A stretch of DNA of 56,619 nt from Macrostomum lignano. Its lineage: Eukaryota. Within the stretch, counting starts at the first letter, position 1. Every line of letters starts with the position of its first letter. This document shows, one piece after another, positions 9,145-45,499 of the stretch. The position numbers were made by a program, and so were the translations under genes. The stretch covers positions 1-56,619 of the forward strand of contig NIVC01004176.1 of the NCBI GenBank assembly GCA_002269645.1, written 5' to 3'. Below the pieces are notes generated by a model that did no database searches, was not told where the DNA came from, and saw only the letters and a list, made by a program, of their open reading frames with translations.

Positions 9145-11488
9145 CACATATACTAGAATAACTGGATGGGCCACTCAGCACATTTGCGTGTAAACTACTT
9201 TCAGTTCAGTAGTAAGTTAAACTGAATCATTTTAATGTATTTTTAAAGCTAAGGCTCATTTATTGACTCTCACCCCAAGCCTAAACCCCCCCCACCGCGC
9301 CTATCCACAGATACTATAAACACTAGATAGGCCACTCCAGCTAATTTTCACAACACGACAGTTTACTCTACTTTCTGCTTAGTAGTAGTAAAAACATTTT
9401 AGCGTTATTTATATTTTTTTAAAATAAAAAAACAGATGAATGCAATGCAGCAATTATATTGATTTTATTTGCAAAAAGAAACTTATAATTATACTTTCTA
9501 CAATTCAAAGCAACGTTGTGAATGCTTTAGATTGCATAGAAGGCTATATTATTGCAGTCAACTATTGTATATTTAGCAAATACGAGCTATATCATATACT
9601 CCATAATCCATATTCGTGTAGCAAAATAGAAAGATTTCTCATCTTAATCAGCTCATCTGTTTATGAAACTCGCAGCGTGCTGTTGAAGAACAGGGTCTCC
9701 AGTCGCCCTTGTTCAGAGGCAGCATTCAGCACGGCCCAACAGATGAAAAAAACTGGCAAATGCGCCACTTCAAGGTCCAGGGATGTATCCGATGGAGAGC
9801 CAATCCTCAGTGGTTTCGTAACAGGCAGCCGATAAGCAGCAGGACTTTTGTGGTGCAGCTGCAATGAGCTGCTGATGAGATGATATCCTTTGACCAGAGC
9901 ACCCCTGACTGCGAGCGCCCTGCCGCCCAGTCGACCGCTGGAAGCTGCGCTAGCCACGCCTCAAAAGTCCATGGATGCACAACTGCGCTGCACTTGCCTT
10001 GACCATCGAGAGTTGCTGCTGCAGCCGCTTGATTTGCCTGTCGCTTTCGGGATTGCTGCTGCAGCCGCTTAATTCGCCTGTCGCTTTCGGGATCGTTGCT
10101 GCAGCCGCTTGATCGTTGCCTCTAGCGCTTGGAACCCGCGAATCGGCTGCAGAGGTGAGAGCTTTCAGCCGCAACAGCTGTTCTCGTCGCAGAATCTTGT
10201 AGCCGAAGGTTGCTCTGCCACAGCACTGGCAGCAGGCAAGTCGCAGGCTCGGCTGCAGATAGATTGCTAATAGGCCCCAGCACTGGAGGGTACATGTCGT
10301 CTGCCTCTTCGTCGTTTATCAGTCCTTTGCACAGAGCTGGTAGCTGGTCTATTTGAACGAGCCGAGGCAGCATCAACTCTTGGTGTGGGATTGCGTCCCA
10401 GCGAAAACAGACGTCTTGCACATCCGTGGCACTTTGTAAGGCAGCAGTAGGCCTCGTCCATAAAGTGCAAGCTGAACACACGTAGGCCCCGTGATTTAAT
10501 TGTTTATAAAGGTCAATAATATCCACGCTCCTGCAGTAGCTGCTACCAGCGCTTCGCCAGTGTCATCTTTTGGTAATTTATGCATTCGCAACGGATTTTC
10601 TTTCTCAGATGTTAATAGCACTAGTACAGAGCTCGTGCAAGTGGGAGCACAGCAGTGGTTCGAATCAAAACATTTCTCGAGTACGAGATTAGATAGAAAA
10701 GCTAGTATGCACTCGAACTTTCTTTAACTCTGAATCTTGTCCTGTTCATCTATATATATAAGCTTGTATTTAAGCACGATTCGCCACCCCCAAATTTTCT
10801 AACCCACAACCTCTAAACCCCCACCCCTAACCCAGGCTAGCTATGTGCAGTCCTTTATTTTCTATCCCACCACCAGTGGGCCTAAATTATCGATCCACTC
10901 ACCCTTCCTTATACGAAACTGATATTAACCCTATTCCAGACTACCCCCCTTTCCTCCACTTTGAAAGATAGCGGCATTGTACACTGTCTGTCGCGTCTTA
11001 ATGTACACCATTACTGCACATAACAAGTTAGTTGTTTATGGCGTTAGCAAAACGATGTCTCAAAACAGTCACTTGATTTGTCTAATTTAGCAAATAATAC
11101 TGTTGCTTCCTTTCATTGCTACTAAGCAGAAAGTAGAATAAAAAACTTGCCCAGAAAATTAGCCTGAGTGGCCTATCTAGTGTTTATAGTATCTGTGCGC
11201 CTATCCACACTACCCCCCACCCCGCCCCGCCCCAAATTTTATTGCCTTTCTCTGAATTCCAGCCTAAATCTGCCATGTACATTTCAGTGGACTGGCCAAT
11301 GTACATTATTGCTGAACCAATTAGCAAGTTGTTTACGCCTACAAGCTTGGGCTTCAAAACTTATCAAATCATTTCAGCTGCCTTTAAAATAGCTTATGTA
11401 TTCTTCTTTGCTACTGAACTGAAAGTAGAAAGCTGTTTTACTAAGTATGTATGCCTGAGTGGCCCATCTCGATATTTGAGAATCTGTG
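9145..11488 (-). mobile_element. Internally deleted P-element-superfamily transposon (2344 bp) with a decayed THAP-transposase 5' region
   Basis: 8-bp TSD CGTTAAAC at 9137-9144 and 11489-11496; imperfect TIRs CACATATACT.../...AGAATCTGTG. Minus-strand frameshifted THAP motifs (CCAPTC, HKLPKDD, YVC-SLHF, DAIP), a coiled-coil segment and LHHKSPAAYRL, similar to the N-terminus of P/THAP9 transposases. Confidence 0.8.
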
Positions 11489-13979: not shown

Positions 13980-15085
13980 CGGTGGACCAAGCTGAGGATT
14001 TGGAGACAGCGGTGGACCAAGCTGAGGATTTGGAGACAGCGGTGGACCAAATTGAGGGTTTGGAGACAGCGGTGGACCAAGCTGAGGATTTGGAGACAGC
14101 GGTGGACCAAATTGAGGGTTTGGAGACAGCGGTGGACCAAGCTGAGGATTTGGAGACAGCGGTGGACCAAGCTGAGGATTTGGAGACAGCAGTAAACCAA
14201 GCTGAGGATTTGAAGACAGCGGTGGACCAAGCTGAGGATTTGGAGACAGCAGTAAACCAAGTTGAGGATTTGAAGACAGCGGTGGACCAAGCTGAGGATT
14301 TAGAGACAGCGGTGGACCAAGCTGAGGATTTGGAGACAGCGGTGGACCAAGCTGAGGATTTAGAGACAGCGGTGGACCAAGCTGAGGATTTGGAGACAGC
14401 GGTGGACCAAGTTGAGGATTTGGAGACAGCGATGGACCAAGTTGAGGGTTTGGAGACAGCGGTGGACCAAGTTGAGGATTTGAAGACAGCGGTGGACCAA
14501 GTTGAGGATTTGGAGACAGCGGTGGACCAAGTTGAGGATTTGGAGACAGCGGTGGACCAAGCTGAGGATTTGGAGACAGCGGTGGACCAAGCTGAGGATT
14601 TGGAGACAGCAGTAAACCAAGCTGAGGATTTGTAGACAGCGGTGGACCAAGCTGAGGATTTGGAGACAGCAGTAAACCAAGCTGAGGATTTGGAGACAGC
14701 GGTGGACCAAGCTGAGGATTTGGAGACAGCGGTGGACCAAGTTGAGGATTTGGAGACAGCGGTGGACCAAGTTGAGGATTTGGAGACAGCGGTGGACCAA
14801 GCTGAGGATTTGGAGACAGCAGTAAACCAAGCTGAGGATTTGGAGACAGCGGTGGACCAAGTTGAGGATTTGGAGACAGCGGTGGACCAAGCTGAGGATT
14901 TGGAGACAGCGGTGGACCAAGCTGAGGATTTGGAGACAGCGGTGGACCAAGCTGAGGATTTGGAGACAGCGGTGGACCAAGCTGAGGATTTGGAGACAGC
15001 AGTAAACCAAGTTGAGGATTTGAAGTCAGCAGCAAGTAAACAGAGGATTTGAAGTCAGCAGCAAGTAAACAGAGGATTTGAAGTA
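13980..15085. repeat. 30-bp minisatellite (GGTGGACCAAGCTGAGGATTTGGAGACAGC), about 35 copies
   Basis: Read directly; the period is a multiple of 3, which explains the long repetitive ORFs on both strands. Confidence 0.97.
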
Positions 15086-15435: not shown

Positions 15436-16175
15436 TCACTCGAATTTCGTCCGCTTAGCCGGCGGTCCTTCGCTGTGCCGCCGATCGCCAAAGCCACCGC
15501 CTCGGCCGCCGCCGCGGTCAAAGCCGCCGCGACCGCCGCCGCGGTCAAAGCCGCCCCGACCGCCGCCGCGACCGCGGTCAAAGCCGCCACCGCGACCTCC
15601 GCGTCCACGGTCAAAGCCACCGCGACCGCCACCCCGCCCGCGATCAAAGCCGCCGCCGCGGCCGCCACCGCCTCGGCCCCTATCGAAGCCGCCCCGACCG
15701 CGGTCCCCGCCGCGTCCGCCCCTGCCGCCCCTCGGAGCGCCGCGCGGCTGCGGCAGAAACCTGGCTAACGGCAGCAGCTTCATGGAGTCGATGAACACCT
15801 TCGTGTCCTTGCCGAGCGACTGGCACTTCACGCCGGGCGCCATCTTTACGGAGAAGTACGCGTCCTTGATGGGACCGAATATCTCGTCCACCTTGCCGAT
15901 TTGCTCCTTGTTCTCCAGGAAGATGGCGCATTGAAGTAGGGAATCTTCTCGTGCGTCAGCTTGCACACCATGTCCTCCACGCACGGCTGCATGAAGTAGC
16001 CGACCTCGTCCACGCTGGCCGGCGGGCCCTGGTCCTCGTACCGGCCGCCGCCTCCGCCACCGCGGCCGCCTCGGAAACCGCCGCCTCGGAAGCCGCCGCC
16101 GCGACCTCCGCGAAATCCGCCACCGCCGCCGCGACCTCCTCCGCGACCGCCGCCGCCACCGCCTCTGAATCCCAT
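15436..16175 (-). CDS. GAR1: H/ACA snoRNP subunit GAR1 (single coding exon; one apparent 1-nt deletion near 15927)
   Basis: N- and C-terminal RGG domains flank the core [64 protein letters not shown]. The span is 740 nt, one short of an open frame; adding one C (gcgcc[c]atc) joins the two ORFs. Probable 47-nt 5'UTR intron 16224-16178 (GTAAGC...TTGCAG). Confidence 0.97.
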
Positions 16176-16300
16176 GGCTGCAAGCGACAAGTTGAATGAA
16201 TAAAAAACTGATGTTGCTGCTTACGGCAGGCAACAAGTTATAAAATAATTTCTTCTTATCACTCAATGAAGCAGGCGACAAAAAACGAATCAATATCCCA

Positions 16301-17928: not shown

Positions 17929-20900
17929 TCAGGCCACGGACTGCCTGGCTTTCTTCTTTTTCTTCTTGTCGGACTGGGGCGCCGCCGCCTCTTCTTCTTG
18001 AGGCTCCGCCGCGGCCGCCTCTTCGCGGTGCTTTTTCTTGGCCTTCTTGGCTGAGGCGGGCTGCTCCTCACCAGGCTCCTGCTTCACCTCCGCCTGCAAT
18101 GCGAGTGCAAGGTGGGAAGTTCGTGATTTCGGGTCAGTCTAAAGTACAGTTCATCCTCTCGTAACTTGCATCGTTGCTCACTAGGAAACTTCTGTTTTCA
18201 GCTTTCACCGTTTCAGTTATCTTCTGTAACCCCACACTGATCCCATGGAGTCCCACACTGATCCCATGGAGTCCCACACTGATCTCGTGGATTCCCCACA
18301 CTGATCCCATAGAGTCCCACACTGATCCCATGGAGTCCCACACTGATCCCATGGAGTCCCACACTGATCTCGTGGATTCCCCACACTGATCCCATAGAGT
18401 CCCACACTGATCCCATGGAGTCCCACACTGATCCCATGGAGTGCCACACTGATCCCATGGAGTCCCACACTGATCCCATGGAGTCCCACACTGATCCCAT
18501 GGAGTCCCACACTGATCCCATGGAGTCCCACACTGATCCCATGGAGTCCCACACTGATCCCATGGAGTCCCACACTGATCCCATGGAGTCCCACACTGAT
18601 CCCATGGAGTCCCACACTGATGCCATGGAGTCCCACACTGATCCCATGGAGTCCCACACTGATCCCATGGAGTCCCACACTGATCCCATAGAGTCCCACA
18701 CTGATCCCATGGAGTCCCACACTGATCTCATGGAATCCCACACTGATCTCGTGGATTCCCCACACTGATCCCATGGAGTGCCACACTGATCCCATGGAGT
18801 CCCACACTGATCTCGTGGATTCCCCACACTGATCCCATGGAGTGCCACACTGATCCCATGGAGTCCCACACTGATCTCATGGAATCCCACACTGATCTCG
18901 TGGATTCCCCACACTGATCCCATGGAGTGCCACACTGATCCCATGGAGTCCCACACTGATCTCGTGGATTCCCCACACTGATCCCATGGAGTGCCACACT
19001 GATCCCATGGAATCCCACACTGATCCCAGGGAATCCCCATACTGATCCCAGGGAATCCCCACACTGATTCCAGGGAATCCTCACACTGATCCCAAGGAAA
19101 CCAACAAACTGATCCCAGGGAATTTTCATACTTCTCAAGGAAGTTTCATACTGACATATCATTTTCGTGAGTCCTTTTATACCCCAACAAATGCCGCAAC
19201 AAGCGCAGCGCCACTCTCACCGCCTGCTCATCGCGCTGCTGCTTCTTTTTCTTCTTTGGCGGCGACGAAGCTGACGCAGCCTCGGAGTCGCCGTCTCCGC
19301 CGACGGCTGCAGCCGGCCGCTTCTCGCCGCGCTGCTCGGCGTTGGCGGCCGAAGCGTCGGCGTCCCGCTTGCCGGTGTAGCCGGCGCCGGAGGGCCCGAA
19401 GTCCGGCACGAAGCGGTCCGACTGGGCGCGGGCCCGGCCGAGGCCGCCGCGGCCGCCGCCTCCGGACTCCAGGCTCTTGAGCCGGCGCTCCAGGTACGCC
19501 CTGCTGGCCAGGCCCATGTCCGGGCCGACGCTGTCGCCTTCGCCCAGTGCGTCAACGCGGATGGCCAGAGCGGTCTTGGCGGCCAGCATGCGGGAGATTT
19601 TGCCTTTGATCTTGGCGTTGGCCTGACCGACCAGGGAGGCGTGGTACAGCAGGCCGTACTTCGGAGTCTGGTGCTTGGTCTTGAGCGCGCGGAATAGCGC
19701 CTTCTCGGCGCCGAGAATCTGCACCGTTGATGACGGGTGCTTGGCCAGAGACAGCAGTGTGCCGGCGTGAGAGATCAGGCGGGCGCCGACCAGCTCGCCG
19801 ACCAGAACCGTCAGATTTGGCGCCACGGCATTCATGCGGCTGCGAATGTAGTCATAGAGCTGAGTCCGGTATTCGCTCATCTCGGACACCTGGTCGCACA
19901 TTGAGTGCACTGCGACCAAATCCGCATCCGTCATCTCCGTGCCCAGCGACACCAAAGCGGCGTTGCGCACATCTTCAATTATCTGTGGGGAATGAGTTCG
20001 GGTTGGTGTACATGCTGGGATGGGATTGGCGTACATGCTGGGGATGGGATTGGCGTACATGCTGGGATGGGATTGGCTTACATGCTGAGGATGGGATTGG
20101 CGTACATGCTGGGGATGGGATTGGCGTACATGCTGGGGATGGGATTGGTGTACATGCTGGGATGGGATTGGCTTACATGCTGGGATGGGATTGGCGTACA
20201 TGCTGGGGATGGGATTGGTGTACATGCTGGGGATGGGATTGGCGTACATGCTGGGGATGGGATTGGCGTACATGCTGGGGATGGGATGGGATGGTGTTAG
20301 AGTGTTTACAGAAACACTCATTTAGAACTCAGCAGACAGCAGAGTGAAGTCACACAAACCTCTTCCGGCAGGCACTCGGTCAGGTCGGTGCTAATGGCAT
20401 TCTCACGCAGTCCCATGGTTTTGACGGCTTTGACGTAGGCCTGGCCATCCTGCACAATCTTGGCCAGCTCGGGAAAGTGCCAGCCGTACATCTCCTTGAC
20501 GCGCATCACGTAGTTGTTGGTTTCCTTGTCCAGGTCGTCCAGCAGGGAGATGGCCTGCACAATCATTGTGTCGATCTTGTCGGGGCTGAACTTCAGCTTG
20601 TACCTGCAGGGTGTTGGCAGCGGGTTAATGGGTGAAGGAACAGAATTTATTGCTAATCAAGACAAAGAGTACATGGATAAAAAACAATGGCTCGCTAATC
20701 TGGCATGGCCTATATTGACGAAGGAACATAATGGATTGCTAATTTAGTCAACAAAGAGCAAGATGGATTGCTAATCTGGTCAACAAAGAGCAAGATGGAT
20801 TGCTAATCTAGTCAACAAAGAGCAAGATGGATTGCTAATCTAGTCATCAGAGAGCAAGATGGATTGCTAATCTAGTCAACAAAGAGCAAGATGGATTGCT

Positions 20901-21707
20901 AATCTAGTCAACAGAGAGCAAGATGGATTGCTAATCTAGTCAACAAAGAGCAAGATGGATTGCTAATCTAGTCAACAAAGAGCAAGATGGATTGCTAATC
21001 TAGTCAACAAAGAGCAAGATGGACTGCTAATCTAGTCAACAAAGAGCAAGATGGATTGCTAATCTAGTCAACAGAGAGCAAGATGGATTGCTAATCTAGT
21101 CAACAAAGAGCAAGATGGATTGCTAATCTAGTCAACAGAGAGCAAGATGGATTGCTAATCTAGTCAACAAAGAGCAAGATGGATTGCTAATCTAGTCAAC
21201 AAAGAGCAAGATGGATTGCTAATCCAGCCAAAACAGCTCGCACGCAATGTGAGCTTACCTGCTCAGGCTGTGCGCCAGTCCCAGCTGCATAGCCGCCATC
21301 TCTCGCGGCGCCACCTGGGGCAGCAGGGCGTCTATTTGGGACCGGATCGCCCGCACCAGCTCCATCACGGCCGAGCTGCACACGCAGCCGATGCCCAGCT
21401 TCTCCTTGATGGCGCTGCCCAGCCGAGAGTCGGCAACGCCGAGAACTCCGTCGAGCACTTCGGTGGTCTGCAGTTTGCGCAATGCCTTGCGCAGCTTCTT
21501 GCTGATGCGGCCCTCCAGCAGGGAAGTGGTGGCTGCCAGGGCCTCCGTAATGTCATCGAACTTGACAAACTGACACAGCTGAACGGCCGAGGCGGCGGCG
21601 GAGGCGTCGGCAAAGTCGCCGAGCACATTCTGGCTCTCCACTAGCCGCTTCTCGTCTAGCACCTTGAAGATGGCGAAGCCGGCGGAGGACTCGAGTAGCA
21701 CTAGCAT
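17929..21707 (-). CDS. NOP58: Nucleolar protein 58 (box C/D snoRNP core), 4 exons
   Basis: Exons 21707-21259, 20603-20360, 19982-19221 and 18093-17929 with GT-AG sites. [29 protein letters not shown]|[37 protein letters not shown], Nop domain [72 protein letters not shown] and a Lys-rich tail. Confidence 0.96.
18230..19120. repeat. 21-bp minisatellite (CCACACTGATCCCATGGAGTC) in NOP58 intron 3
   Basis: Read directly. Confidence 0.95.
20010..20292. repeat. 23-24-bp minisatellite (CATGCTGGGGATGGGATTGGCGTA) in NOP58 intron 2
   Basis: Read directly. Confidence 0.95.
20745..21225. repeat. 32-bp minisatellite (GAGCAAGATGGATTGCTAATCTAGTCAACAAA) in NOP58 intron 1
   Basis: Read directly. Confidence 0.95.
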
Positions 21708-25409: not shown

Positions 25410-25992
25410 ATATGATATATCATTCTGCTCACAGAGTCACAGTGATACCAAGAAGCTAAATTTGGCAAAAATGTTATAAAAATTGGACCTGGGATAGGAG
25501 AGAATTAGCAAAGGGACAATTTGAATTAGGGACTATTATGTTAATTTAACCTCATAAGGTAAGAGTCTCTAATTATCCCTTTGCTCATTCTCTTATCCTG
25601 AGGTCTAACTTTAGTAACTTTTTTGTCAAATCTAGGCCTAGCTTTTTGGTATTACTACATATAAATATAAGCAAATTGATATATCATTTATACACATAGA
25701 TTACTTGGGCTCTACTTTATAAGCTTAAGTTGACAAGCCCTTTCAGGTTGCGCTATTAGTTATATAGGCCCAATAATTATAATAGAATTTTTTTATATAT
25801 TCCTATAAATATAAATATAATATTTATTTATATTTAGTATATTGGTTCCCAGGTCCAATAGCAATATAAATATAATATTTATAGGAATATATAAAAAAAT
25901 TCTATTATAATTATTGGGCCTATATAACTAATAGCGCAACCTGAAAGGGCTTGTCAACTTAAGCTTATAAAGTAGAGCCCAAGTAATCTATG
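25410..25992. repeat. Two adjacent fold-back (long inverted repeat) structures
   Basis: Imperfect arms of about 130 bp within 25410-25690; perfect arms of about 118 bp at 25695-25812 and 25875-25992 around a 62-bp spacer. Confidence 0.85.
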
Positions 25993-27135
25993 GTCATCAT
26001 GAATGATTTAATTAGTCATTCAGTGCAGATGAATGGCTAACAGGCTAAACATGATTGACAAATAATTTTGGCTTGAACCAAATGTGCAGTCGCCATAAAT
26101 TCTAGGCCCTAGTTAACAAAATGCCAGTTGATGAAATGCCAGTTGACAAAATGTCCTGGAACCTAAAAAAATCTGTCCAGCCTAGCCTAGGCTTATTAAG
26201 CAATTGAATGAATAAATCAGAATTCCACCCATTCTTTTTATTAGAAATCGCGTTAGGCCTAGTGGGAAAAATCTAAAAGTGGGATAAACAATTTTTAAAC
26301 AAGTGGAAAATCTAGCTGAAGCTGTTAATCAATTACTTAAACAAATATTCAATTGCAATGTATGAAAACAACACGTGTCAAGATAAAAGTTTCTTAATGA
26401 AATTTCGTAGGCAAGACAAAACAAATCTTAAGAGCATAACGCGGATCGTTACTGGAGTGTTCGCTAAAACCCGTAAAACTTTAAAACAGAGACGCTAGCT
26501 ATTGCAAGCCAATTTAAACCAATAGTGATTAAGTCACATAGTCATGCCTTCATTTTTCAATATTCTGACAGGTTAGAAAATAAACGTATGTGTGCCGACT
26601 AAATTTCTCGATCATACATATGCAGTAGGGCCCTTTTCTTCGGGTAGCGAATACAAAAAATAGCCCGATGATTAGTCTGATGATTATTCGCTCTAACTCT
26701 ACTGCTGATATTTGGTCGTAAAGCCAGTTTTAAACACCAGAAAGGGCTCTAATTAGTTAGCTTAACTTTTGTCATCATTTATACCTCATTCCGGATTAAC
26801 TTACTTAGATTCTAAAGGGTTTTTGCGCTCTTGGAGTGACTGCATCCATTGTTTGAAAGACTAAGACAAAAGACTTTCCCTACGAGTTTTAGTGATATAG
26901 CGTGTAATTAATTTTTTTTATTTGTCAGAAGCCTTTAAGTCTACTTTACTATTACTTTCATATGTGAAGATCGCGGTTAGAGGTATGGTTTAGCTACTAT
27001 AGAAGGAACCCCCTGTTGAACATAAAAGACTCATTGTCATGTCAAGACTCATGACTCATGGGGGAATTGCTGTAATGTTGTGGCTCTTATGGAGGGTTTA
27101 CTGAGATGCCAAGAGCAATTGGTAGAAAAAGGTAA

Positions 27136-30100
27136 CAACAAACACAACAGAGTACGCTGCCAGATCACAAAAGCAGCGTCAGATGGCGCGCTTCAAAGCT
27201 TGGGCGCGAACAAAAGCCGCACCGCCGGCAGAGTCCGGGGCGCCGGCGTCAGCCAGCAGACAGTCGACGTAGCGCCGAGTCCTCGCCTGTCCCCGCCGGT
27301 AGGGTGCCTGCAACGTAAGTAGCAGCACCTCCTGCACCGGCTCCGGGCAGTAGGCCTCGGCGCGGATGACGTGGCCTGCCAGCTGGAGTCGCCGACGGCG
27401 CAGCAGATCGCTAGGACGGGCCAGGCCGGCGCGATGATAGAGCGCCGTGTTGGTGACTCGCTCGTTGCCGATCTTGAAGGCGGCGCGCAGCAGGCCAGCG
27501 TGCGCCGCGTCGACTTGAGCCTCGAGCGAGTCTGTCAGCGTCCAGGTCTCGGCGTTGTATAACAGGACGGTCTCGATCACCGCCTGGAACAGCGCCGCCC
27601 TCTGGCGGTCCGGTAGGGCCTCGGACTGCAGGACTGACCTTATGGAACGAAAGGCAGCCCAAGCAAGTCCTCGGCGACGCCGCAGATCCTCGCGGACGTC
27701 GGGAACCAGACCGCCGAGGTAGACGAACTGCTGACATCTTGGAAGCTCACTCGCCTGTCCGTCAGCGCATCGGCAGAAGATTGCAGCCTCGGTGTCGTCC
27801 GGCACGCATAGCACGACGGTCTTCTGCGTGTTGACCACCAGGCCGACGCTCGCCGCAACGGCAACCAGCCTATCCAGCTGTCGTTGGGCGCCCTCGACGG
27901 TCGAGGACAGCAGGGCGAGGTCATCGGCGTAGCCAAGCACGCTGAGCCGTCTCTCCGGTTGGCGTCGACCCACGCGTCGCCGCAGCAGGAAGCCGTCGTC
28001 GTTGGAAGGCAGAGCAGTCCGTAGCACCCAGTCAAGCACCAGAATAAATAGGAACGGCGCTAGCGTATCTCCCTGGAGCACCCCGGAGGATGTCTCGAAG
28101 AAATCCGATAGGCCGTCCGGTGTTGAGACAGCAGCCGTCGTGCCGTGGTACAGCGCCATGACAGCAGAAATCAGCAGCTCTGGCACGTTGTACGCACGGA
28201 GCACCTCTGGGAGCGCGTCCCTCACGACCGAGTCAAAAGCCTTCCTGAAATCGACGAAGATCAGGATCAGGGTCAACTGGCGGATGCGCGCCTCCTCGAT
28301 GACTCGTCGAAGAGCCAGGATCTGCGTCACTGTGCCGCGATGGGGCCGGAATCCGTTCTGCTCAGGTCGCAGGTACGGGTCCAGCACAGGCTGTAACCGC
28401 GATAGCAGCATGCGGTTGAACAGCTTCGCGGCGCAGGACTGTAGGCAGATGCCTCGATGCTCCTCGAGCTTGGTGGTGCCCGGCTTCTTTGGAATGGCGA
28501 CGATGTGCGCCGTGGTCCATTCGTTTGGCGCCACCTCACCGAAAAGCACGCGGTTCATCACTCTGGCGACCTCAGTGGCCACGCAGTGGATCCGCAGCGC
28601 CTCGGTGGGCACCTCGTCCGGACCAAGCGCTTTGCCGCCCGGCGACTGCCGAGCGAACTTCACAACGTCGGCTGTGCTGACTGGGGCAACATTGAAGCTC
28701 TCCTCCGCCGGCAACGGCGTCTCCGGCGGCAGCCTCAGATTTTCTGGAAGCGGAGGGGGCGGCGCGTTGACAATGGCGGCGAAGAACTCGCGCAGCTCGT
28801 TCCTGCGCTCGTCCGGAGTGTCGCCTGCCAGGTTGAGCGCGATGCGCCGCTTTCGCCCCGTCAGAGTGTTGATGGCGGACCAGGCCACGCGCCCTCTGGC
28901 ATCGGGCCCTGCGGCAGAGACGGCTTGGATGGCGTCATCGACAGCGGACTGCTGCCGCTGCAGGTAGACAGCCGCCAGAGCCTCCTCCGCCTCGCGAGTT
29001 GGCCGCCCACTCAGACGGAGCCTCTCCAGATCTTCCTCGCTTCGTCGATCGCGGGGTCGTCCTGCCAGACCGGCTGCCCGCGCTGGGCCGGTCGCATCAG
29101 CGGGACTGCTTGCTCCGCAGCGGCTCGAACTGCAGCGCTCACCTCCGCGTACTCGGCTCCTCCACGCTTGTCGCCCAGCGCAGTGACAAAGGCACCGGCA
29201 AAGCGACGTCGCGTCTCGGCGTCCCTGAGCGCGCGGTAGTAGCGCCGCGGTGGCCGCTTTGGCGGACGGTAGAGCGGGTCCCGAAGCCGAAGGTCGCAGA
29301 TGAGCAGCCGATGGTCGGACCGCAGAGCCAGCGGCGTAATGGTGTGGCAGTTGGTGACGCGGCGGCGCTCACGAAAGCGCACAAGCACGTGGTCGAGCTG
29401 TGCCAGCCTCCGCGTAGCGTTCCGGCCACGCGAGTTCCGCCGCCTCCGCTTGCAGCCCACGAAGGTCGCGAACCTGCCCGGCGACTTGCGGAATCTGGTC
29501 TTAATTTATTTGCAGTCTTAATTTATTTGCAGTCTTAATTTATTTGCAGTCTTAATTTATTTGCAGTCTTAATTTATTTGCAGTCTTAATTTATTTGCAG
29601 TCTTAATTTATTTGCAGTCTTAATTTATTTGCAGTCTTAATTTATTTGCAGTCTTAATTTATTTGCAGTCTTAATTTATTTGCAGTCTTAATTTATTTGC
29701 AGTCTTAATTTATTTGCAGTCTTAATTTATTTGCAGTCTTAATTTATTTGCAGTCTTAATTTATTTGCAGTCTTAATTTATTTGCAGTCTTAATTTATTT
29801 GCAGTCTTAATTTATTTGCAGTCTTAATTTATTTGCAGTCTTAATTTATTTGCAGTCTTAATTTATTTGCAGTCTTAATTTATTTGCAGTCTTAATTTAT
29901 TTGCAGTCTTAATTTATTTGCAGTCTTTATTTATTTGCAGTCTTAATTTATTTGCAGTCTTAATTTATTTGCAGTCTTAATTTATTTGCAGTCTTAATTT
30001 ATTTGCAGTCTTAATTTATTTGCAGTCTTAATTTATTTGCAGTCTTAATTTATTTGCAGTCTTAATTTATTTGCAGTCTTAATTTATTTGCAGTCTTAAT

Positions 30101-30945
30101 TTATTTGCAGTCTTAATTTATTTGCATCACGGTGCAGATAAATGCCGCTACCTCCTCGTGGTGAGAGTGGAGAGCCGCGCTTAACTGCTGCGGCGGCCAA
30201 ATGCGGCAGGACCAAGCGAGGGCAGCGGAGCGCGCGTCGGCGAGTTGAACGCCGTCGCGAGCGAAACTGGCGAGGTCGGCAACGTGGCGCCGCCCGCCGA
30301 GCTGCTGCTGCGCTGGCCCAATTGGATCTTCCGGGTGGCCCGGGGACCATGAGGCTCACCAGCATCGAGCCCCAGCCGTACCAGAGGGCACGCTTCGGGT
30401 CGGGACGCTGAACTGCCGCACTCTCAAGGCCACATGGCGGAGAGGGCTGCTGGCGAGGCTAGCGCTCGACCTCAGCTGTGATGTCATCGCACTACAGGAG
30501 GTGTCTATCAGAGCCGACCCCGGACTTCACTGTGAGGACCTGGGCGCCGGTTGGACACTCTGGTACACCTCAGCGGATGAGCGAGGCCGTGGAGGAGTTG
30601 GAGCGCTGATCGGACCGAGGCTGCAGCAGAGCTGTCGCTGCATCTCCCTGTCTTCTCGGCTGCTTCGGGTCGACGTCCGGCTTCGCGGCCGGAACACTGT
30701 TCTGCGCATATGCGCCGCCTGCTACCCGCTCCGATGAGGCTCAGGCCTTCTTCGAGCAACTCTCGGTGCGGGTGGAGGAGATGGCGCAACGTGACACAGT
30801 GGTCATTCTCGGAGACCTGAACGCAGTTCTGCGTAGGTCCGAGCGATCGCTGTTTGTGACAGCGCGCGAGAACGGCAACACCGGAGCGCTAGAGGACTTC
30901 CTGGAGAGACAGGACATGGTGTCGGCCAACACCAGATTCCGCAAG
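27136..30945 (-). mobile_element. RTE-like non-LTR retrotransposon (APE + RT) with an inverted 5' part
   Basis: Minus strand 29499-27179: endonuclease C-terminus (LDHVLV..SDHRLL) and RT (QNGFRPHRG, FVDFRKAFDSV, GVLQGDTLAPFLF, YADD, YLG). Plus strand about 30130-30945: endonuclease N-terminus (LRVGTLNCRTL, DVIALQE, GRGGVG, VILGDLNA, SANTRFRK). Direct repeat AGAAAAAGGTAA at 27124-27135 and 30944-30955. Confidence 0.93.
29498..30126. repeat. 17-bp satellite (GTCTTAATTTATTTGCA) x37 at the retrotransposon inversion junction
   Basis: 629 bp = 37 x 17; one variant unit near 29925. Confidence 0.97.
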
Positions 30946-31701
30946 AAAAAGGTAAGCAAAAGCAAAAGGTAGAAATGTAGGAGTTAGGGTTAAGCTGCCA
31001 TACGGCTTAAAGCGAGGCTTCGATGCCAAAGCTCACAGGGGATGCTGATACCTTTTAGGCTCAGATAGCTGCATGGCTTTCAGAGCTGATGCTTTTTTAT
31101 TTAACATTTTTCTTATGATACTAACAATAATCGTGATTGTAGGTCAAAACCGACATTATGTTTACATATTAAAAGAATTTTACTCCATCGTTTGTTGCCT
31201 CCCCAACGGGGCCGGGGGTCGCTGATTGCTAGTCACATTTAGTTTCTGAGAATTCAATATTGTAACAGTGCTTTCTGGTGTATAGAGAGAGGCTGGCCAG
31301 CACAAGAAACCTCTGTAAAATTTTCTCTCTATATCCCTGCATGGTCAATGCGATTCAGTCCCAGCAGTGTCCTTTGCAGCGGCAACGACTTATTGAGATT
31401 GACGGCAAAAAGGCACTGGTTAGCAGGTTAGTGGGCAGAGGCTCTTCTAGCCGGAAACCCGACTTCGAGAGAGCTGCAGGCAGCGGTGTCGGAACATATT
31501 TCAAAGTGGGGGGGGCTATTGGTGGGAGGGCACATTGCAAATAATTTCTTTAAATCTAAAGGCACCCAAACTCCTGCTATTATATCAGTTTGTGAAATTG
31601 TGACAACCAGGCCGATATTCAATTTTGAGTTGGAAGTGGATTGCGGCGGACTCGGAATTTCGATCAGAGACGCCAAAGTGAACCGATAAATACTAATAAA
31701 A

Positions 31702-40171: not shown

Positions 40172-42775
40172 TCAGACAGCGGAAAACAACAAAGAATTAG
40201 AAACTGCAAGGCGATCTACTACATTTAGGAGAACAGAATGCAGAGTCCAGAATGCCGTGGTCGCGATCGCGCAGTTCTTCTCCACGACTGGTCGGACCGA
40301 AGGATCGGTCACAATCTGTTTGAGCTCCGAGCTCAGTGGTCGGAACACGGTCACTCCGCTAAGCAGCAGGCACTGCAATGCCCCGCATGGATGGGTTCTA
40401 ATCTCATTTGCTGGTGCGTGTCATATGCTCGTAGCTACACATTTGTCCTACAGCATGTCCTGCGTTTGTCCTACAGCATGTCCTGCATTTGTCCTACAGC
40501 ATGTCCTGCATTTGTCCTACAACATGTTCTGCATTTGTCCAACAGAATATCCTGCATTTGTCTTTAAAGCATGTCCTGAATTTGTCCTACAGCATGTTCT
40601 GCATTTGTCCAACAGAATATCCTGCATTTGTCTTTAAAGCATGTCCTGAATTTGTCCTACAGCATGTCATGCATTTGTCCTACAGAATTTCCTCACCATT
40701 CCGAAAATGACTGCGGCCAGCATCATCAGCATCGGCTTCTGTCGCGCAAGCCAAGGTACCGGACGACCCACTCTGGATGCAGAGAAGATCAGATGGACGC
40801 GAAGGGTCTTCACCAACTGACTCGCGTAGCAAGCAGTCAGGCTGAGCTGGAATGCGCAGTTCAAAGCATTGCACATTACGTGCGAGCTGTCTACAGCGAA
40901 CAGACCGAGACACGCTAGACCGAGGAGGTTCCCACACATGCACGTGACGGACAAGTGTATCGACGAGGCCTTGATGAGCTTGTGGTGTCGACGGTTGATG
41001 AACAGAGCGAGCACGACGACCAGGAAGATCGAGAGTAGAGCGAGACATGCCAGCAGCACAGGAAACTGCAGTCCGTCTCTCCACGCGTACACCGGTATCG
41101 ACTCGCAGCTCAGCCGGTCTTGACTGGGCCAGTGAAACTCCGAACACGACAGACACGACTTGCCATCATCCGACACGATCTCCTGTTTGAAGCACGGCTT
41201 GCACATAAAGCAGCAAGCATCTGTCTCCAACTTGATCTCGCCAGCACTGCACGGAGCACTGCAGAATGACTTTGGCAGTTCCGACTGAGCTGCATGCTGA
41301 TCGGAGCTCGAGTTCTGCCACCATCGAATAGGTGTGAGGTCGCTCAACGTAAGACCGGCTGACTCCATCCACGTTCCGACCTTCACCAGCTGACCGTCCG
41401 GCTGCTCCTGACGAATCTCGTAGGCCGGCGACCCGTCACCGTTCGAGTCGAAGCTCACGTTTCCGGTTCGCATGAAAGGGAAGCTGGAGTTCGCAAGCAG
41501 CTTCATCACCTTCGGACCTGTGACACATGCACTCACAGCCGTAACATTCGGCCACTTTGTCGCGCAATCGACCAGAGCGACACGCTCGATACACGAGACC
41601 AGAATGTTGATTGAGTCCAGAAGTCTTGCGACAGGAGCCACCTCAGAGTCGATTGATAGACTCGACTTTGAGCCGACTCTACAACTGCCGTCAGAGCAGC
41701 ACGATGCAGCGCTATCCAATGTGCAGTTGAACAGAAGTCGGAGCAGTTGTTCACCGAACGGATAGCCGAGGACCTCAGATCCGTTCAGTGAGTGGTAAAA
41801 CTGGATGAGGTCGGGCGTGGCGAACTTTGTAAACGAGGTATAGATGGCACCCGTGGTGAAATGTTTGTAGGCAACGGAATTCGCATCCGTTGTGATGATA
41901 ACTCCTTTTCTGCTACTTATCGCTTGGAGTAAGAATTCTGGAATGCTACTAAAGGTATCGAATACAAGAAAGCCACGCAGGTGGGGGTACTGACTCATCT
42001 GGGTGTCGACATCCTCCTTTGTCAAAAACATGTTGATAGGTAAAGTGAAAGCCACGCACACTGTCTGACCGAATTTGCTACTTTGCTGAAGCAGTAGACG
42101 CGTGTTCTGGAGCAGTCCTCTACCGTACACATCGTCTCTGTGCACGATTCCTACCATGGTCCAGTTGAAGTACTGCACGAGGTGTACGACTGCCTTGGCC
42201 TGGTAGCTGTCAGGAGCTACTTGACGGAACACGTTGGGGTAGAGCGTCTTGTCCGACAGAGCATCGCTGCTGCACTCGTTTCCGACCTGCGGCATGGAGT
42301 AGAGAGACAGCTGACGGGACACCAGCTGCGTCTCGCTGCTACGCCAGCCCGACACGACGGCATGAACGAAGTAGAACTTTTCTCCGAGGCTGGACACTAC
42401 CTGGTCGCAGAATCCGGCAGCCGCATCAAGGCCGGTCGGGTGTGTCCATGCCGGCCTAATCCGCTTCAGCATGTCCACCAGACGACGGTCCAGGTAGCAC
42501 GGATCAAGATGGAGCAGACCGAGGCGGAGATTGCGACTGGTCCATTTCGCATTGATGAGTTTAGCAGCGTAGTGCGGTGCCAGATTGCGCAGAAAAATTT
42601 GTTCGCTTATCATTGAATTGAGAGTGTCACAGTATTTATTCACACTTTGCAGAACGGCTAAGTTGATGAGGCCGTTCGGGACGCATAGCACCTGTCCAGG
42701 GTGGTACTGCACATTCTGCGCTGTAACTGTGTGTAAAAGATAAAGCGCAACAACTGTGGTTGCTGAGAGGGCCAT
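40172..42775 (-). CDS. Class C GPCR (metabotropic glutamate receptor-like), copy 1; truncated at the start of TM5
   Basis: Exon 42775-40697: signal peptide, Venus-flytrap (PQV...LSDKTLY...APDSYQAKA, WTMV, YGR), cysteine-rich domain (PKSFCSAPC..CCFMCKPC) and TM1-4. Exon 40372-40172 matches copy 2 only down to 40243, then reaches a stop after unrelated sequence. Confidence 0.88.
40440..40690. repeat. 23-bp minisatellite (ATTTGTCCTACAGCATGTCCTGC) in the GPCR copy 1 intron
   Basis: Read directly; the counterpart at about 52265-52465 has a different unit arrangement. Confidence 0.9.
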
Positions 42776-45499
42776 CGTTGCTAAAAATTTGCTAGTTTTT
42801 TCCGTTAAGACAGAAGAAAGAGGCAGTCCGTTTTGGCAGTTCAATTTTATGTTGAGCCCGAGACTGCCAGCAATTGGCTGCTGGCCAACCCGTGGGCGCC
42901 TTTCATCGGTTCAATTTTTATAGGCTCCTATTGTGCGACTCTGATGGAGATGGTTTCTGTCGTGGAACCGGATAGAGCTGGCTGACGAAGGTTTTTAGCT
43001 GAGTGATGTATGCGATCTTGGCTTTTACCAGAGTGTCAAACAGTCTAAGAGGAAATATAATTTACTAGCGTATGCAACCCAATAGGTAGCTATAAATTTG
43101 TCTCTTCGTTTGCGGATACAGGGCCATAAGGTCTAACGCAAACACTCAACTCATGATCCTTCCGATCTCTCTCGGCCTCATCAACCACTCATCAGTCTCT
43201 GCGACAGTTAACCAGGTCCAACCAGCTACAGGTGAGAGCTCGCCAAAAGTAAACAGCCCTGTACATTGTTCAAGTTTGGCCAGATAAAACAGAGGAAGAG
43301 AGCGAAAAAGATCTTTTAGCCTAAAACAGGAAAATTTAGTGAGCCAGCAAATATCGTATCAGCATGGCATTCCCCCCTATTGGGCCTGAGCTCTAGCAGG
43401 CCGGTCATCAGGCCCTTTGCGCATGATGCAGCAGATTCGGACAATGAAGAGCAAAGGCTGGATGAATGCTCCTCTCAGTCATTGCTTCACCGGTGTCATT
43501 TGCTATGTCCCATTTAGAATAGAGCTTGGCCGAATGATTTTTGCTAGCCAAGTTTGCAGCTCATTGCGGGTGATTCTGAGTATTACTTGGGATTAACTTG
43601 GATGTAAAAAGTCTGATATATGCCAACACTGATGACTTTGCGCACCCAAAACAAAGCAACTCGAAAACCTACAAAATGGTTTATACAAACGACCAAATGC
43701 TTGTTCCTGTCTTAGCGGGTGTAGCTCGTACTCAAAGTTTTACTTTTACCTGTTTTAATTAGTTTAAAAAGTTACTCGAGACAATTGTGTCGCTTAGGCC
43801 ACTCTATTGTGGGATCGTTTCGTGGTGTGGCAGTTCGGTCCTGTAACAGTTTTTTATATGACAGCTTGGTCATGTAACCTTCTTTCGTGTGACATTTCGG
43901 TCATAACCCTTTTGTCGTGTGGCAATTTGGTCATGTACTCGTATATCACCAAAACTGCATCAGTCAGCGATATTTGAAAACTACACAATAACAAGAGTTT
44001 GAAAACTTATTGGTGAGAAAATATTTTGAACGCCTGTATGCAAGTTTCATGTGAACACTTAGCTAGATCAGAGCCGTGCGGCATTAGGCAGCTCCACCAG
44101 TATCGCAGCAGTACTGCTGTCGCAGATCTTGGGTGTTGATGTCAGCAGTTTTCGTGTGAGCTTGACGCTCTAAGTGCAAGCCAACTTCATCAGGCTGAAT
44201 TTCTCCGTTTTTCGCTTGTGCATACCATTAGGCTGGCAAGCACAATGAACTTCCGTTTTGCACTGGTCTTGCTGTCCTGAGATGATCTGTTGATTGTCGA
44301 TGTTCGTGCTGCTGAGATCGTTGATGCTGCTTCTGCTGCTGCTGTTGTTTTTGTTGTTATTGACGGGCCCAGCTGGGTCACCTGGTCATTGGGCCGACGG
44401 GGACGGTCTAGCTGCAACATGGCACAGCCAGTCGTCATTGTCCCGCTCGCCTCTGGACAGGGGCCTTGCACCACCGCGTCGCCGCGCAAGTGTGCAGAGG
44501 GCATGTCGGCGAGCTTGCCACCAGGTCCACCAGGGTCAACCCCAGCGGAACCGTAATACCAGCTTTCGTGTCCGTAGCCAGCGGACCTTCCACGCCACGC
44601 CTGACAGTCCAGCACCGGCGGCCAGCCCCGATGGGGTCTAGCCAGTGTCTGGAGCTGCTCAGAGGCCTGCTGGATGTGAGGCTGCTGCTGCTGCTGGTGT
44701 AAGCCGAACTAAGTTGGGTGTGCCTTAGACAGAGGCTAGCGTTCGCAACGTTGGCGCCTACTTTTTAACTTTGGTCCCCTCGCTCCAGGCTCACGTTGGG
44801 TCCTCTCGTTGCCGTCCAGCCTCGGCCAGGTTACACGACCAGGTGCCCTAGGCCTAGCCTAATTCCGGTTCCTAATCCTAATCCTATCAACATTTTCCTA
44901 TGGCTCATAAGGCTATTCGTCATTTCGTAGGAAATTTTATTGTTCGCCAAAATACATTGAACAAAAGATCACTACAAGCTCGAATGTTTATTTTAGTTTA
45001 TTTATTTGTCCGAGATTTCGTCAACCGGGGTAAAAAAGAGTCTGCTACAGCTTCTTGTAAATTGTTCTCTGGATTGTACGAGGCGAGAATTCATATTTAC
45101 TAGCCTCCCAAGTGAGTCGGGGCAGCAGTTGAAGCTGCGCTGAGTACATTGCACAAGGGGAGAGCGAGGTGCAGCGGAAAGCAAAGAGAGACGCGTCGTC
45201 AGAGTTGACGATGCCCCTTGGCGTTTGAAAAGCACGCACCTGCAGTACAATAGCAACCCCCAACCCCGATCTAGCGACCAGTGTACACACGTACACTACA
45301 AAGGTTAGAGAGCAGATCAGTGTGCAAGACAACCCTAGCCACGTACACCCGATGGAAGGCGCCGCAGTTACACTTGTCCTCTTTTGAATGCATGACTTTC
45401 ATACCGCATGTAGCGAGGGTAAAGAAAGCATTAATACATTTGCTAGTGTATTAATGTTTGCACGGTAGACGTTAGGATTGGACCCAGTGTGATACCAAC

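What the first reader, a model, noticed from the sequence alone, without database searches (positions are those of the whole stretch)
27124..30955. RTE-like retrotransposon with twin-priming geometry and an inversion junction expanded into a 37-copy satellite
Seen: the endonuclease N-terminus is on + (about 30130-30945) while the endonuclease C-terminus and RT are on - (29499-27179). The halves are contiguous in protein (...SANTRFRK / SPGRFATFVG...LDHVLV) and share a 15-bp overlap, ACCAGATTCCGCAAG (30931-30945; reverse complement at 29485-29499). One direct repeat, AGAAAAAGGTAA (27124-27135, 30944-30955), brackets the whole structure and overlaps the internal breakpoint by 2 nt. Established: this layout (TSD, inverted 5' part ending at the RNA 5' end, 3' part, tail, TSD, with microhomology at the internal primer) is the twin-priming signature described mainly for L1. 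Inference: this was one integration event by a non-L1 LINE, and the junction between the two cDNAs was reiterated 37 times (17-bp unit). That would be a route by which retrotransposition directly creates minisatellites in a minisatellite-rich genome.
Basis: partly seen in the sequence, partly recalled or inferred. Interest (0 to 1): 0.85.

Follow-up and report, generated by a model that had tools for sequence, protein, structure and literature searches.

The report
Inverted LINE carrying its own 5' repeats
This is one insertion of an RTE-like jumping gene (LINE) whose front third was copied in backwards by twin priming, and the 37-copy 17-bp array in its middle is the element's own normal 5' leader, not a satellite born at the inversion junction.

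Summary
These are a GC-rich endonuclease+RT LINE split into a + strand 5' part (30127-30945) and a - strand 3' part (29499-27136), a 15-nt overlap, a 12-nt direct repeat bracketing the whole structure, and a (GTCTTAATTTATTTGCA)x37.0 array between the halves.

The layout fits twin priming. There is a 12-bp TSD, a (TTG)-type tail next to one TSD copy, a 2-nt microhomology at each of the two new junctions, and a small duplication at the inversion point. Relatives are collinear across the breakpoint.

Four collinear, non-inverted relatives (57-84% identity, from separate public samples) carry a homologous 17-nt tandem repeat at their own 5' end: 4.8 copies, at least 8.5 copies, and twice at least 2 copies. 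In each it lies directly upstream of a conserved, covarying hairpin that abuts the start codon, and the 3' half of the unit forms the left arm of that hairpin.

The array is therefore the family's native 5' UTR and entered with the full-length inverted cDNA. Later change in copy number cannot be excluded. The host is probably Macrostomum lignano. Interest is moderate: a rare natural non-L1 twin-priming case, plus an apparently undescribed 17-nt "mini-monomer" LINE leader.

The parts
27124..27135 (+). Target-site duplication, copy next to the element's 3' tail (AGAAAAAGGTAA). Its 3' end is the inferred primer for first-strand cDNA.
   Evidence: The 12-mer occurs only here and at 30944. The GC step begins at 27136. 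On the element strand the TSD reads TTACCTTTTTCT, starting with T, and a T-run lies at -9 to -12 upstream. This matches the RTE insertion signature described in PMC6007223.
27136..27178 (-). 43-nt 3' UTR with an 8-bp stem directly after the stop codon, ending in a degenerate (TTG)n tail (GTTGTGTTTGTTG).
   Evidence: Relatives end in (TTG)5-7 at the homologous place: L002, L003, L004, L006, L009. The stem was predicted.
27179..29499 (-). 3' (direct) cDNA segment: endonuclease C-terminal part, linker, reverse transcriptase and C-terminal domain. An open 569-aa ORF runs 27179-28888, and a 1-nt deletion lies near 29032.
   Evidence: Translation, RVT_1 at 8e-29, collinear alignment to L087, L001, L088 and L003, and indel map.
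29485..29499 (-). 15-nt stretch present in both halves (ACCAGATTCCGCAAG on the element strand). This is the small duplication at the inversion point.
   Evidence: Relatives carry this stretch once and read straight through it.
29498..30126 (+). (GTCTTAATTTATTTGCA)x37.0, in sense orientation relative to the 5' segment. This is the element's native 5'-terminal tandem-repeat leader. Its outer end is the cDNA-cDNA junction, with a GT microhomology.
   Evidence: TRF and unit check. Homologous 17-nt arrays sit at the 5' ends of collinear L088, L091, L087 and L004.
30116..30143 (+). Conserved 5' hairpin. The left arm is the 3' part of the last 17-mer plus T30127, the loop is CACG (30128-30131), and the right arm is GTGCAGATAAAT (30132-30143). 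The start codon ATG at 30142-30144 overlaps the right arm.
   Evidence: RNAfold predicts a 10-14 bp stem at the homologous place in the window and 7 relatives. RNAalifold predicts 11 pairs, 4 of them with compensatory changes, and no breaks in the 10 core pairs.
30127..30945 (+). 5' (inverted) cDNA segment: hairpin, start codon, basic N-terminal region and the N-terminal two-thirds of the AP endonuclease. It has a 1-nt deletion near 30339 and a 5-nt deletion near 30695.
   Evidence: The M. lignano protein P0031 is 94-100% identical over these stretches and is in frame at both deletions.
30944..30955 (+). Target-site duplication, second copy. Its first 2 nt (AG) are shared with the element sequence ...CGCAAG, giving the microhomology where the second-strand 3' end primed inside the RNA.
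   Evidence: The GC step ends at 30945.

Best explanation
This is a single retrotransposition event of a full-length, roughly 3.2-kb RTE-like LINE, probably in Macrostomum lignano, resolved by twin priming.

Inferred sequence of events:
1. The endonuclease nicked the + strand after ...AGAAAAAGGTAA. That 3' end primed cDNA from the (UUG)n tail and copied the RNA back to element position about 805.
2. The second nick, 12 nt away on the other strand, released a 3' end (...TTTTTCT-3'). This end paired through 2 nt (AG) with an internal site of the same RNA, at position about 819.
3. That second primer drove a second cDNA all the way to the RNA 5' end.
4. The two cDNA 3' ends were joined through a GT/AC microhomology.

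The RNA 5' end of this family natively consists of tandem 17-nt units followed by a hairpin that abuts the AUG. The second, inverted cDNA therefore carried the array into the middle of the insertion.

Shown: the geometry, the junction sequences, collinearity of relatives, and the presence of homologous 5' arrays and the hairpin in relatives.

Inferred: the order of events, and use of a single RNA for both cDNAs.

Open: whether all 37 units were in the RNA or some were gained later by slippage or unequal exchange.

The 17-mers probably act as a reiterated internal promoter/initiator. The unit junction GCA|GTC resembles an Inr. This last point is inference only.
For: Geometry:
- The TSD, 15-nt overlap, tail and GC boundaries are as described.
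- The endonuclease domain is reconstituted only when the two halves are joined.
- Relatives L001, L002, L004, L087 and L088, and the M. lignano protein P0031, run collinearly through the breakpoint.
- The 3' tail (TTG)n is shared with relatives.
- TSD length and T-rich target fit RTE-clade data (PMC6007223; SR3 TSDs of 10-12 bp in PMC1291365).
- 5' inversions go with TSDs of 10-20 bp (PMC4245944).

The array is native to the element:
- L088 positions 1536-1618 read flank | 15-nt first unit + 4 x GACCYATTATATTTGCA | hairpin | ATG.
- L091 starts inside at least 8.5 x GTCTTAGCATATTTTCA, then hairpin and ATG.
- L087 (84% nt identity) and L004 start inside arrays of at least 2 units.
- The period is 17 in all of them. 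Units share GTCYYA...ATATTTKCA and change together with the hairpin's right arm.
- The outer end of the array is in the same unit phase in the window (GTC...) and in L088 (GACC...), as expected if it marks a transcription start.
Against: - No empty site and no spanning reads could be examined, so single-event origin and assembly correctness rest on sequence logic alone.
- Microhomologies of 2 nt are weak on their own.
- The relatives with arrays are 57-84% identical rather than same-family copies, and three of the four contigs begin inside the array, so normal copy number is unknown. Thirty-seven units is far more than the one fully resolved case (4.8).
- The array has only 1 substitution in 629 nt while the coding part carries three frame-breaking deletions. 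This could mean recent homogenisation or expansion after insertion.
- L090 and L005, a sublineage at 60-66% aa identity, lack the 17-mers.
- In cell-culture assays 5' inversion was almost restricted to human L1 (PMC4245944).
Confidence: 0.8

Rival explanations
1. Twin priming produced a junction with no array, or with a single 17-nt junction sequence, and that junction was then reiterated 37 times, creating a new minisatellite.
For: The array sits exactly at the internal junction and is nearly perfect, with 1 variant in 37 units. The genome is rich in minisatellites (15% simple and tandem repeats in M. lignano, PMC5730564).
Against: Homologous 17-nt arrays sit at the 5' ends of collinear, non-inverted relatives. 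The unit contains the left arm of a hairpin conserved across the lineage. The array is in sense orientation and in register with the 5' segment, not a hybrid of the two junction sides.
Confidence: 0.04
2. An ordinary full-length collinear insertion (TSD - array - 5' part - 3' part - tail - TSD) was later rearranged by an inversion of the segment [array + first 819 nt].
For: Such an inversion would give the same order and orientation of parts (reasoning). The copy is old enough to carry three frame-breaking deletions.
Against: One breakpoint would have to fall exactly at the TSD/element boundary. The other would have to create a 15-nt inverted duplication. Both new junctions show the microhomologies expected for primer annealing. 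No inverted repeats that could mediate such an inversion were found around the element.
Confidence: 0.06
3. Dual priming: two different RNA molecules of the family were used, one at each nick. A related variant is two independent insertions landing at one site.
For: The halves overlap by 15 nt rather than leaving a gap, which a single template explains less simply. Dual priming has been proposed for L1 (PMC2837659).
Against: The end of the first cDNA and the start of the second lie within 15 nt of each other on a 3.2-kb template. This is expected if the first RT ran into the second primer on one RNA. The 15 shared nt are identical, and a single TSD pair brackets everything. LINE insertions are not normally 3'-truncated, which argues against two independent insertions.
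Confidence: 0.07
4. This is an assembly artefact that joins two fragments through a collapsed or chimeric repeat.
For: Tandem arrays are assembly hazards. M. lignano assemblies are highly redundant and repeat-rich (PMC5730564).
Against: A chimera would not produce a perfect 12-nt TSD at the outer boundaries, an exact 15-nt coordinate overlap and in-phase array ends.
Confidence: 0.03

Closest known systems
Twin priming / 5'-inverted LINE-1 insertions (Ostertag and Kazazian 2001, as described in PMC2837659 and PMC4245944)
   Same: One TSD pair bounds two oppositely oriented fragments of one element. The 3' fragment carries the tail. The inverted fragment starts at an internal site next to the other TSD copy. 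There is a small overlap at the inversion point, short microhomologies, and a TSD in the 10-20 bp range.
   Different: The element is an RTE-like LINE with a (TTG)n tail rather than an L1 with poly(A). The inverted cDNA reached the true 5' end, so nothing is missing from the element. In the retrotransposition assays of PMC4245944, inversion was seen only for human L1 plus a single Nimb-2_DR insert.
RTE-clade LINEs (RTE-1 of C. elegans; SR2 and SR3 of Schistosoma; BovB)
   Same: The element is about 3.2 kb. Its single ORF of about 1,040 aa has an N-terminal AP endonuclease plus RT. The 3' UTR is very short and ends in a trimer repeat. TSDs are 10-12 bp and targets are AT/T-rich (PMC1291365, PMC6007223).
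   Different: Phylogenetic placement was not tested here. The 5' leader built only of 17-nt tandem units plus a start-codon hairpin is not mentioned in the RTE papers read, and four targeted literature searches found no description of it.
Tandem 'monomer' 5' UTRs of mouse and rat L1 (my own knowledge; not checked in a paper here)
   Same: Sense-oriented tandem repeats form the 5' end of full-length copies, vary in number between copies, and are carried through the RNA.
   Different: The unit is 17 nt rather than about 200 nt. The last unit base-pairs with a single downstream arm to form a hairpin at the AUG. Promoter activity has not been tested.

Membership tests
Twin-primed (5'-inverted) LINE insertion | Two fragments of one element in opposite orientation inside a single pair of target-site duplications | tested here: met
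   The 12/12 TSD lies at 27124 and 30944. The halves lie on - (29499-27136) and + (30127-30945). This is the only LINE copy in the window.
Twin-primed (5'-inverted) LINE insertion | The direct fragment ends in the element's 3' tail next to one TSD copy, and the inverted fragment begins at an internal element position next to the other | tested here: met
   The (TTG)-type tail at 27136-27148 is homologous to the tails of relatives. The inverted part abuts the TSD at element position about 819.
Twin-primed (5'-inverted) LINE insertion | The inner ends of the two fragments are adjacent on the element map (small deletion or duplication), and the element is otherwise collinear | tested here: met
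   There is a 15-nt duplication. L001, L087, L088 and P0031 read straight through this point.
Twin-primed (5'-inverted) LINE insertion | Microhomology between the second-strand primer and the RNA, and often at the cDNA-cDNA joint | tested here: inconclusive
   There are 2 nt (AG) at 30944-30945 and 2 nt (GT) at 29498-29499. This is consistent with the model but too short to be significant alone.
Twin-primed (5'-inverted) LINE insertion | The empty site carries one copy of the duplicated target | not testable with these tools
   The window's ORF is not on record elsewhere, and no M. lignano genomic DNA is reachable with these tools.
RTE-clade non-LTR retrotransposon | A single long ORF with N-terminal AP endonuclease and RT, and no gag-like ORF1, RNase H or CCHC domain | tested here: met
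   Pfam finds only Exo_endo_phos and RVT_1. Relatives are 936-1087 aa with the same two domains. The best solved match is L1 ORF2p over EN+RT.
RTE-clade non-LTR retrotransposon | Length of about 3.2 kb with a very short 3' UTR ending in AT-rich tri- to pentamer repeats | tested here: met
   The element is 3,168 nt without the array. The 3' UTR is 43 nt and ends in a degenerate (TTG)n tail (GTTGTGTTTGTTG); the relatives' tails are (TTG)n, (TTA)n or (TAA)n. The criterion is taken from PMC1291365.
RTE-clade non-LTR retrotransposon | TSDs of about 10-12 bp. For (GTT)n-tailed members, the TSD starts with T about 10 nt downstream of a T-run | tested here: met
   The TSD is TTACCTTTTTCT, and the upstream sequence is ...CTTTTGCTTTTGC. 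The criterion is taken from PMC6007223. This rests on a single locus.
RTE-clade non-LTR retrotransposon | RT and EN phylogeny places the element inside the RTE clade | not tested
   No named RTE reference sequences were returned. The only named hits are unclassified M. lignano proteins and one Centruroides protein.
LINE with tandem-repeat ('monomer') 5' UTR | Sense-oriented tandem units at the 5' end of full-length copies, varying in number between copies and lineages | tested here: met
   Copy numbers are 37 (window), 4.8 (L088), at least 8.5 (L091), at least 2 (L087) and at least 2 (L004), with a degenerate second unit in L001.
LINE with tandem-repeat ('monomer') 5' UTR | The units carry promoter/initiator activity, and transcription starts inside a unit | not testable with these tools
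   The only hints are an Inr-like GCA|GTC at each unit junction and the outer array end lying in the same phase in the two resolved 5' junctions, the window and L088.
   Homologous arrays are present in collinear L088, L091, L087 and L004.

The most novel reading that the evidence does not exclude
The 17-nt units are not passive leader sequence. They would be a self-renewing 5' end for this LINE lineage: a reiterated initiator whose copies are lost when transcription starts inside the array, and regained when the reverse transcriptase (or later replication) slips between identical units. In effect this would be a telomere-like answer to 5' erosion. The single downstream arm would be able to pair with any unit. 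Every full-length insertion would then seed an expandable minisatellite, contributing to the tandem-repeat load of Macrostomum genomes.
Probability: 0.2. Interest if true: 0.65.

Novelty: new member of a known kind. Interest (0 to 1): 0.4.

Why it matters
Twin priming is documented almost only for mammalian L1. In the paper library searched, all 40 listed of the 106 papers using the term concern mammalian L1-driven retrotransposition. In the one comparative assay found, inversion occurred for L1 plus a single Nimb-2_DR insert.

A clean natural example from an RTE-like element with a 12-bp TSD supports two ideas. [quoted passage not shown] The case also shows why a tandem array inside a rearranged transposon should first be checked against the element's own ends.

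The by-product may be the more useful lead: a LINE lineage whose whole 5' UTR is a 17-nt tandem repeat plus a covarying hairpin at the start codon. It is conserved down to 57% protein identity and found in flatworm and environmental samples. It could be a compact model for how LINEs keep a promoter at their 5' end, and for how transposons spread minisatellite seeds.

Tried and rejected
1. Exact look-up of the window's 569-aa ORF in public assemblies, to find other alleles or an empty site: nothing on record.
2. Metagenome scan with a protein profile: 80 loci, but only L007 and L009 are close, and neither shows a clean 5' end. The roughly 30%-identity RTE-like contigs do not share the 5' architecture.
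3. Second and third protein searches gave no named RTE references, so clade phylogeny stayed untested.
4. Rfam on the whole window: no hit.
5. Viral-contig scan for three ATTTKCA motifs at period 17: 57 unrelated phage or giant-virus repeats, none next to a LINE ORF.
6. Literature searches for RTE or LINE 5' tandem repeats and for Macrostomum RTE elements found nothing relevant. The original twin-priming paper is not held.
7. Considered and rejected: the 17-mer as a satellite that the element targets.
   - The array is absent from the 3' flanks of relatives.
   - It lies inside the TSD here.
   - Its sequence co-varies with the element's own hairpin arm.
8. Considered and rejected: the array as untemplated or filler DNA at a 5' junction. 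The reasons are the same.

Full report
**Observation**

The region 27136-30945 is a GC-rich island (0.61-0.70) in AT-rich DNA (0.23-0.39). A 0.23-GC stretch inside it corresponds to a tandem array.

TRF reports (GTCTTAATTTATTTGCA)x37.0 at 29498-30126 with 99% matches. Only unit 26 differs, by one base.

The - strand of 29499-27179 encodes the C-terminal part of an AP endonuclease followed by a reverse transcriptase. The + strand of 30142-30945 encodes a basic N-terminal region and the N-terminal part of the endonuclease. When the halves are joined, Pfam finds Exo_endo_phos across the join and RVT_1.

ACCAGATTCCGCAAG occurs at 30931 and, reverse-complemented, at 29485. AGAAAAAGGTAA occurs only at 27124 and 30944, exactly at the compositional boundaries. 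A 12/12 match at fixed positions has a chance of about 9e-8 in this flank composition.

**Origin of the window and of the element**

The only named homologues are Macrostomum lignano proteins. P0031 is 94-100% identical to the window's endonuclease segments, and P0048 and P0049 are 91-93% identical over the RT. The window is therefore most likely M. lignano or a very close relative. That genome has 15% simple and tandem repeats (PMC5730564), in keeping with the many minisatellites seen here.

Unnamed relatives at 50-87% protein identity occur on contigs of about 1.9-4.7 kb (most about 3.3-4.2 kb) from ENA, JGI and Logan assemblies. These include a Tara Oceans marine metagenome. The full-length ones have a single 927-1087-aa EN+RT ORF.

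The architecture fits the RTE clade as defined in PMC1291365 and PMC6007223:
- The element is 3,168 nt without the array.
- It has one ORF and a 43-nt 3' UTR ending in a degenerate (TTG)n tail; relatives have clean (TTG)n tails.
- It has a 12-bp TSD that starts with T downstream of a T-run.

A clade phylogeny could not be run.

**Geometry**

Nucleotide alignments show that L001, L002, L004, L087 and L088 run collinearly through the point where the window copy is broken. They carry the 15-nt stretch once.

Read on the element strand, the window shows this order:
1. TSD (TTACCTTTTTCT)
2. the reverse complement of positions 819 to 1
3. the reverse complement of the array
4. positions 805 to 3168
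5. the (TTG) tail
6. TSD

This is the twin-priming layout described for L1 (PMC2837659). The junction sequences fit the model in three ways:
- The + strand end ...GGTAA-3' is continuous with the complement of the tail.
- The - strand end ...TTTTTCT-3' shares AG/CT with the RNA at ...CGCAAG and continues into antisense cDNA.
- The first cDNA end ...CTGGT-3' shares GT/AC with the outermost array unit.

A TSD of 12 bp lies in the 10-20 bp range that accompanies L1 inversions, whereas an element making 5-bp TSDs gave none (PMC4245944).

The copy is defective in any case. It has deletions of 1, 5 and 1 nt near 30339, 30695 and 29032.

**The array belongs to the element**

This is the decisive result.

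| Locus | Identity to window | 5' end as read |
|---|---|---|
| L088 | 77% nt, collinear | ...TTCTGTTC \| GACCCTCTATTTGCA (GACCYATTATATTTGCA)x4 \| CACCCCCGGGTGTGTAAATATCC ATG; TRF period 17, 4.8 copies |
| L091 | 57% aa, (TTA)n tail | contig begins inside at least 8.5 copies of GTCTTAGCATATTTTCA, then CTGCGG TGGAAATATG |
| L087 | 84% nt | contig begins TGAATTATTTGCA GTCCTGAATTATTTGCA CTCCGG TGCAGATAATG |
| L004 | 67% nt | contig begins CATGATATTTTCA GTGCCATGATATTTTCA CAAC TGTGAAAATAT |

L088 has unrelated flank upstream, including a mariner-type transposase gene. L001 has a degenerate second unit at the same 17-nt spacing.

In the window and in all seven relatives with a readable 5' end, the last 10-14 nt before a 3-6-nt loop pair perfectly with the sequence just upstream of, or overlapping, the start codon.

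RNAalifold gives 11 pairs, four with compensatory double changes. Examples are TTTGCA/TGCAGA in the window, TTTTCACA/TGTGAAAA in L004 and TATACGCC/GGCGTATA in L002. No pairs are broken in the 10 core positions.

The left arm is the 3' half of the 17-mer. The unit is therefore homologous element sequence that evolves together with the rest of the 5' end. It is neither a hybrid of the two junction sides nor host satellite. It is absent from the relatives' 3' flanks, and here it lies inside the TSD.

**How it most likely works**

The family's 5' UTR is [17-mer]n + loop + right arm + AUG. Because arrays are found in retrotransposed copies, they must be part of the RNA.

In this event the second cDNA, primed from the second nick, ran to the RNA 5' end. 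It thereby placed the array between the two halves.

The outer array end is in the same unit phase in the window (GTC...) and in L088 (GACC...). In both it falls directly after the position of the A in the unit junction GCA|G. This junction resembles an initiator (YYANWYY; TCAGT in L004), which suggests that each unit can serve as a transcription start. That is inference from two junctions only.

Copy number varies (4.8, at least 8.5, 37). Contigs that start inside arrays suggest arrays too long for short-read assembly.

It cannot be decided here whether the 37 units were all inherited or partly gained after insertion. The near-perfect identity of the units, set against three deletions in the coding part, leaves later homogenisation or expansion open.

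**Rivals**

- A later inversion of [array + 819 nt] in an ordinary insertion would give the same map. It needs one breakpoint exactly at the element/TSD boundary and does not explain the 15-nt inverted duplication or the junction microhomologies. No mediating inverted repeats were found.
- Dual priming on two RNAs (PMC2837659) cannot be excluded. The 15-nt proximity of the inner ends on a 3.2-kb template favours one RNA.
- Misassembly would not create the TSD and the in-phase junctions.
- The junction-born satellite is contradicted as described above.

**Comparison and novelty**

Mechanistically this is a member of the twin-priming class, in a non-L1, RTE-like LINE. That is uncommon in the literature available here but not a new mechanism.

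The 17-nt mini-monomer leader with a start-codon hairpin resembles the monomer 5' UTRs of rodent L1 in principle (my knowledge; not checked in a paper here). It differs in scale and in the hairpin. Four targeted searches found no description of it, which is not proof of novelty.

**Verdict**

Twin priming is well supported. Junction-to-satellite expansion is not supported. Overall interest is moderate.

Noticed in passing
window 30116-30144; L087 18-51; L088 1606-1648; L004 18-51; L001 100-141; L002 44-83; L006 172-207; L091 132-163: A conserved 10-14-bp hairpin whose right arm abuts or overlaps the ORF start codon. It shows compensatory changes across relatives down to 57% aa identity. Its function is unknown; translation control, RNA recognition or a palindromic promoter site are possibilities.
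   Followed up: partly
window 29498-30134: Each unit contains ATTTGCA, and the last unit reads ATTTGCAT, which matches the octamer motif bound by POU factors (recalled from memory, not tested). L004 and L091 have ATTTTCA instead, so the match is not conserved.
   Followed up: no
window 27136-27181 (-); L091 3305-3395: A stem lies immediately after the stop codon and before the microsatellite tail: 8 bp in the window (z = -2.0) and longer in L091 (z = -2.7). It resembles the 3' stem-loops reported for RTE-related elements (PMC6007223).
   Followed up: partly
L090 1-460; L005 1-800: A sublineage at 60-66% aa identity has a long, non-repetitive 5' UTR of 400-700 nt and (TAA)n or (TTG)n tails instead of the 17-mer leader. 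The leader type therefore switches within the group.
   Followed up: no
window 15436-16293 (-) and 19146-20321 (-): Two host genes for snoRNP proteins lie close together. One is GAR1-like (Pfam Gar1, 1e-16, with RGG repeats that TRF reports at 15497-16165). The other is Nop56/58-like (Pfam Nop, 1e-60), with a 24-mer minisatellite at 20003-20287 inside the ORF.
   Followed up: partly
window 40240-42844 and 52066-54207: Two class-C GPCR paralogues (ANF_receptor + NCD3G + 7tm_3) lie in a duplication spaced about 11.8 kb apart at 93-99% identity. Each carries the 23-mer array CATTTGTCCTACAGCATGTCCTG.
   Followed up: partly
window 25695-25992: A 130-nt inverted repeat (96% complementary, 38-nt spacer) lies 1.1 kb from the LINE. 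It may be a foldback or MITE-like element.
   Followed up: no
window 592-1016 versus 9183-11488: Several nested inverted-repeat pairs (44-139 nt, most 91-96% complementary, one 76%) lie about 1.8-10.6 kb apart. These may be the ends of a large DNA transposon or an inverted segmental duplication.
   Followed up: no
window, whole: The density of minisatellites is very high, with 68 TRF rows. Examples are a 30-mer x35 at 13980-15030, a 21-mer x42 at 18231-19121 and a 32-mer x16 at 20731-21231. None is related in sequence to the LINE's 17-mer.
   Followed up: partly
L088 363-1382 (-): A mariner/Tc1-type transposase gene (HTH_48, Transposase_1) sits about 150 nt upstream of the relative's 5' array. 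This confirms that the array there borders unrelated DNA.
   Followed up: no
L020 1-93: A distant RTE-like contig (about 30% aa identity) begins with (TATATCTC)x11.6 upstream of its ORF. It is unclear whether this is flank or another kind of 5' repeat leader.
   Followed up: no
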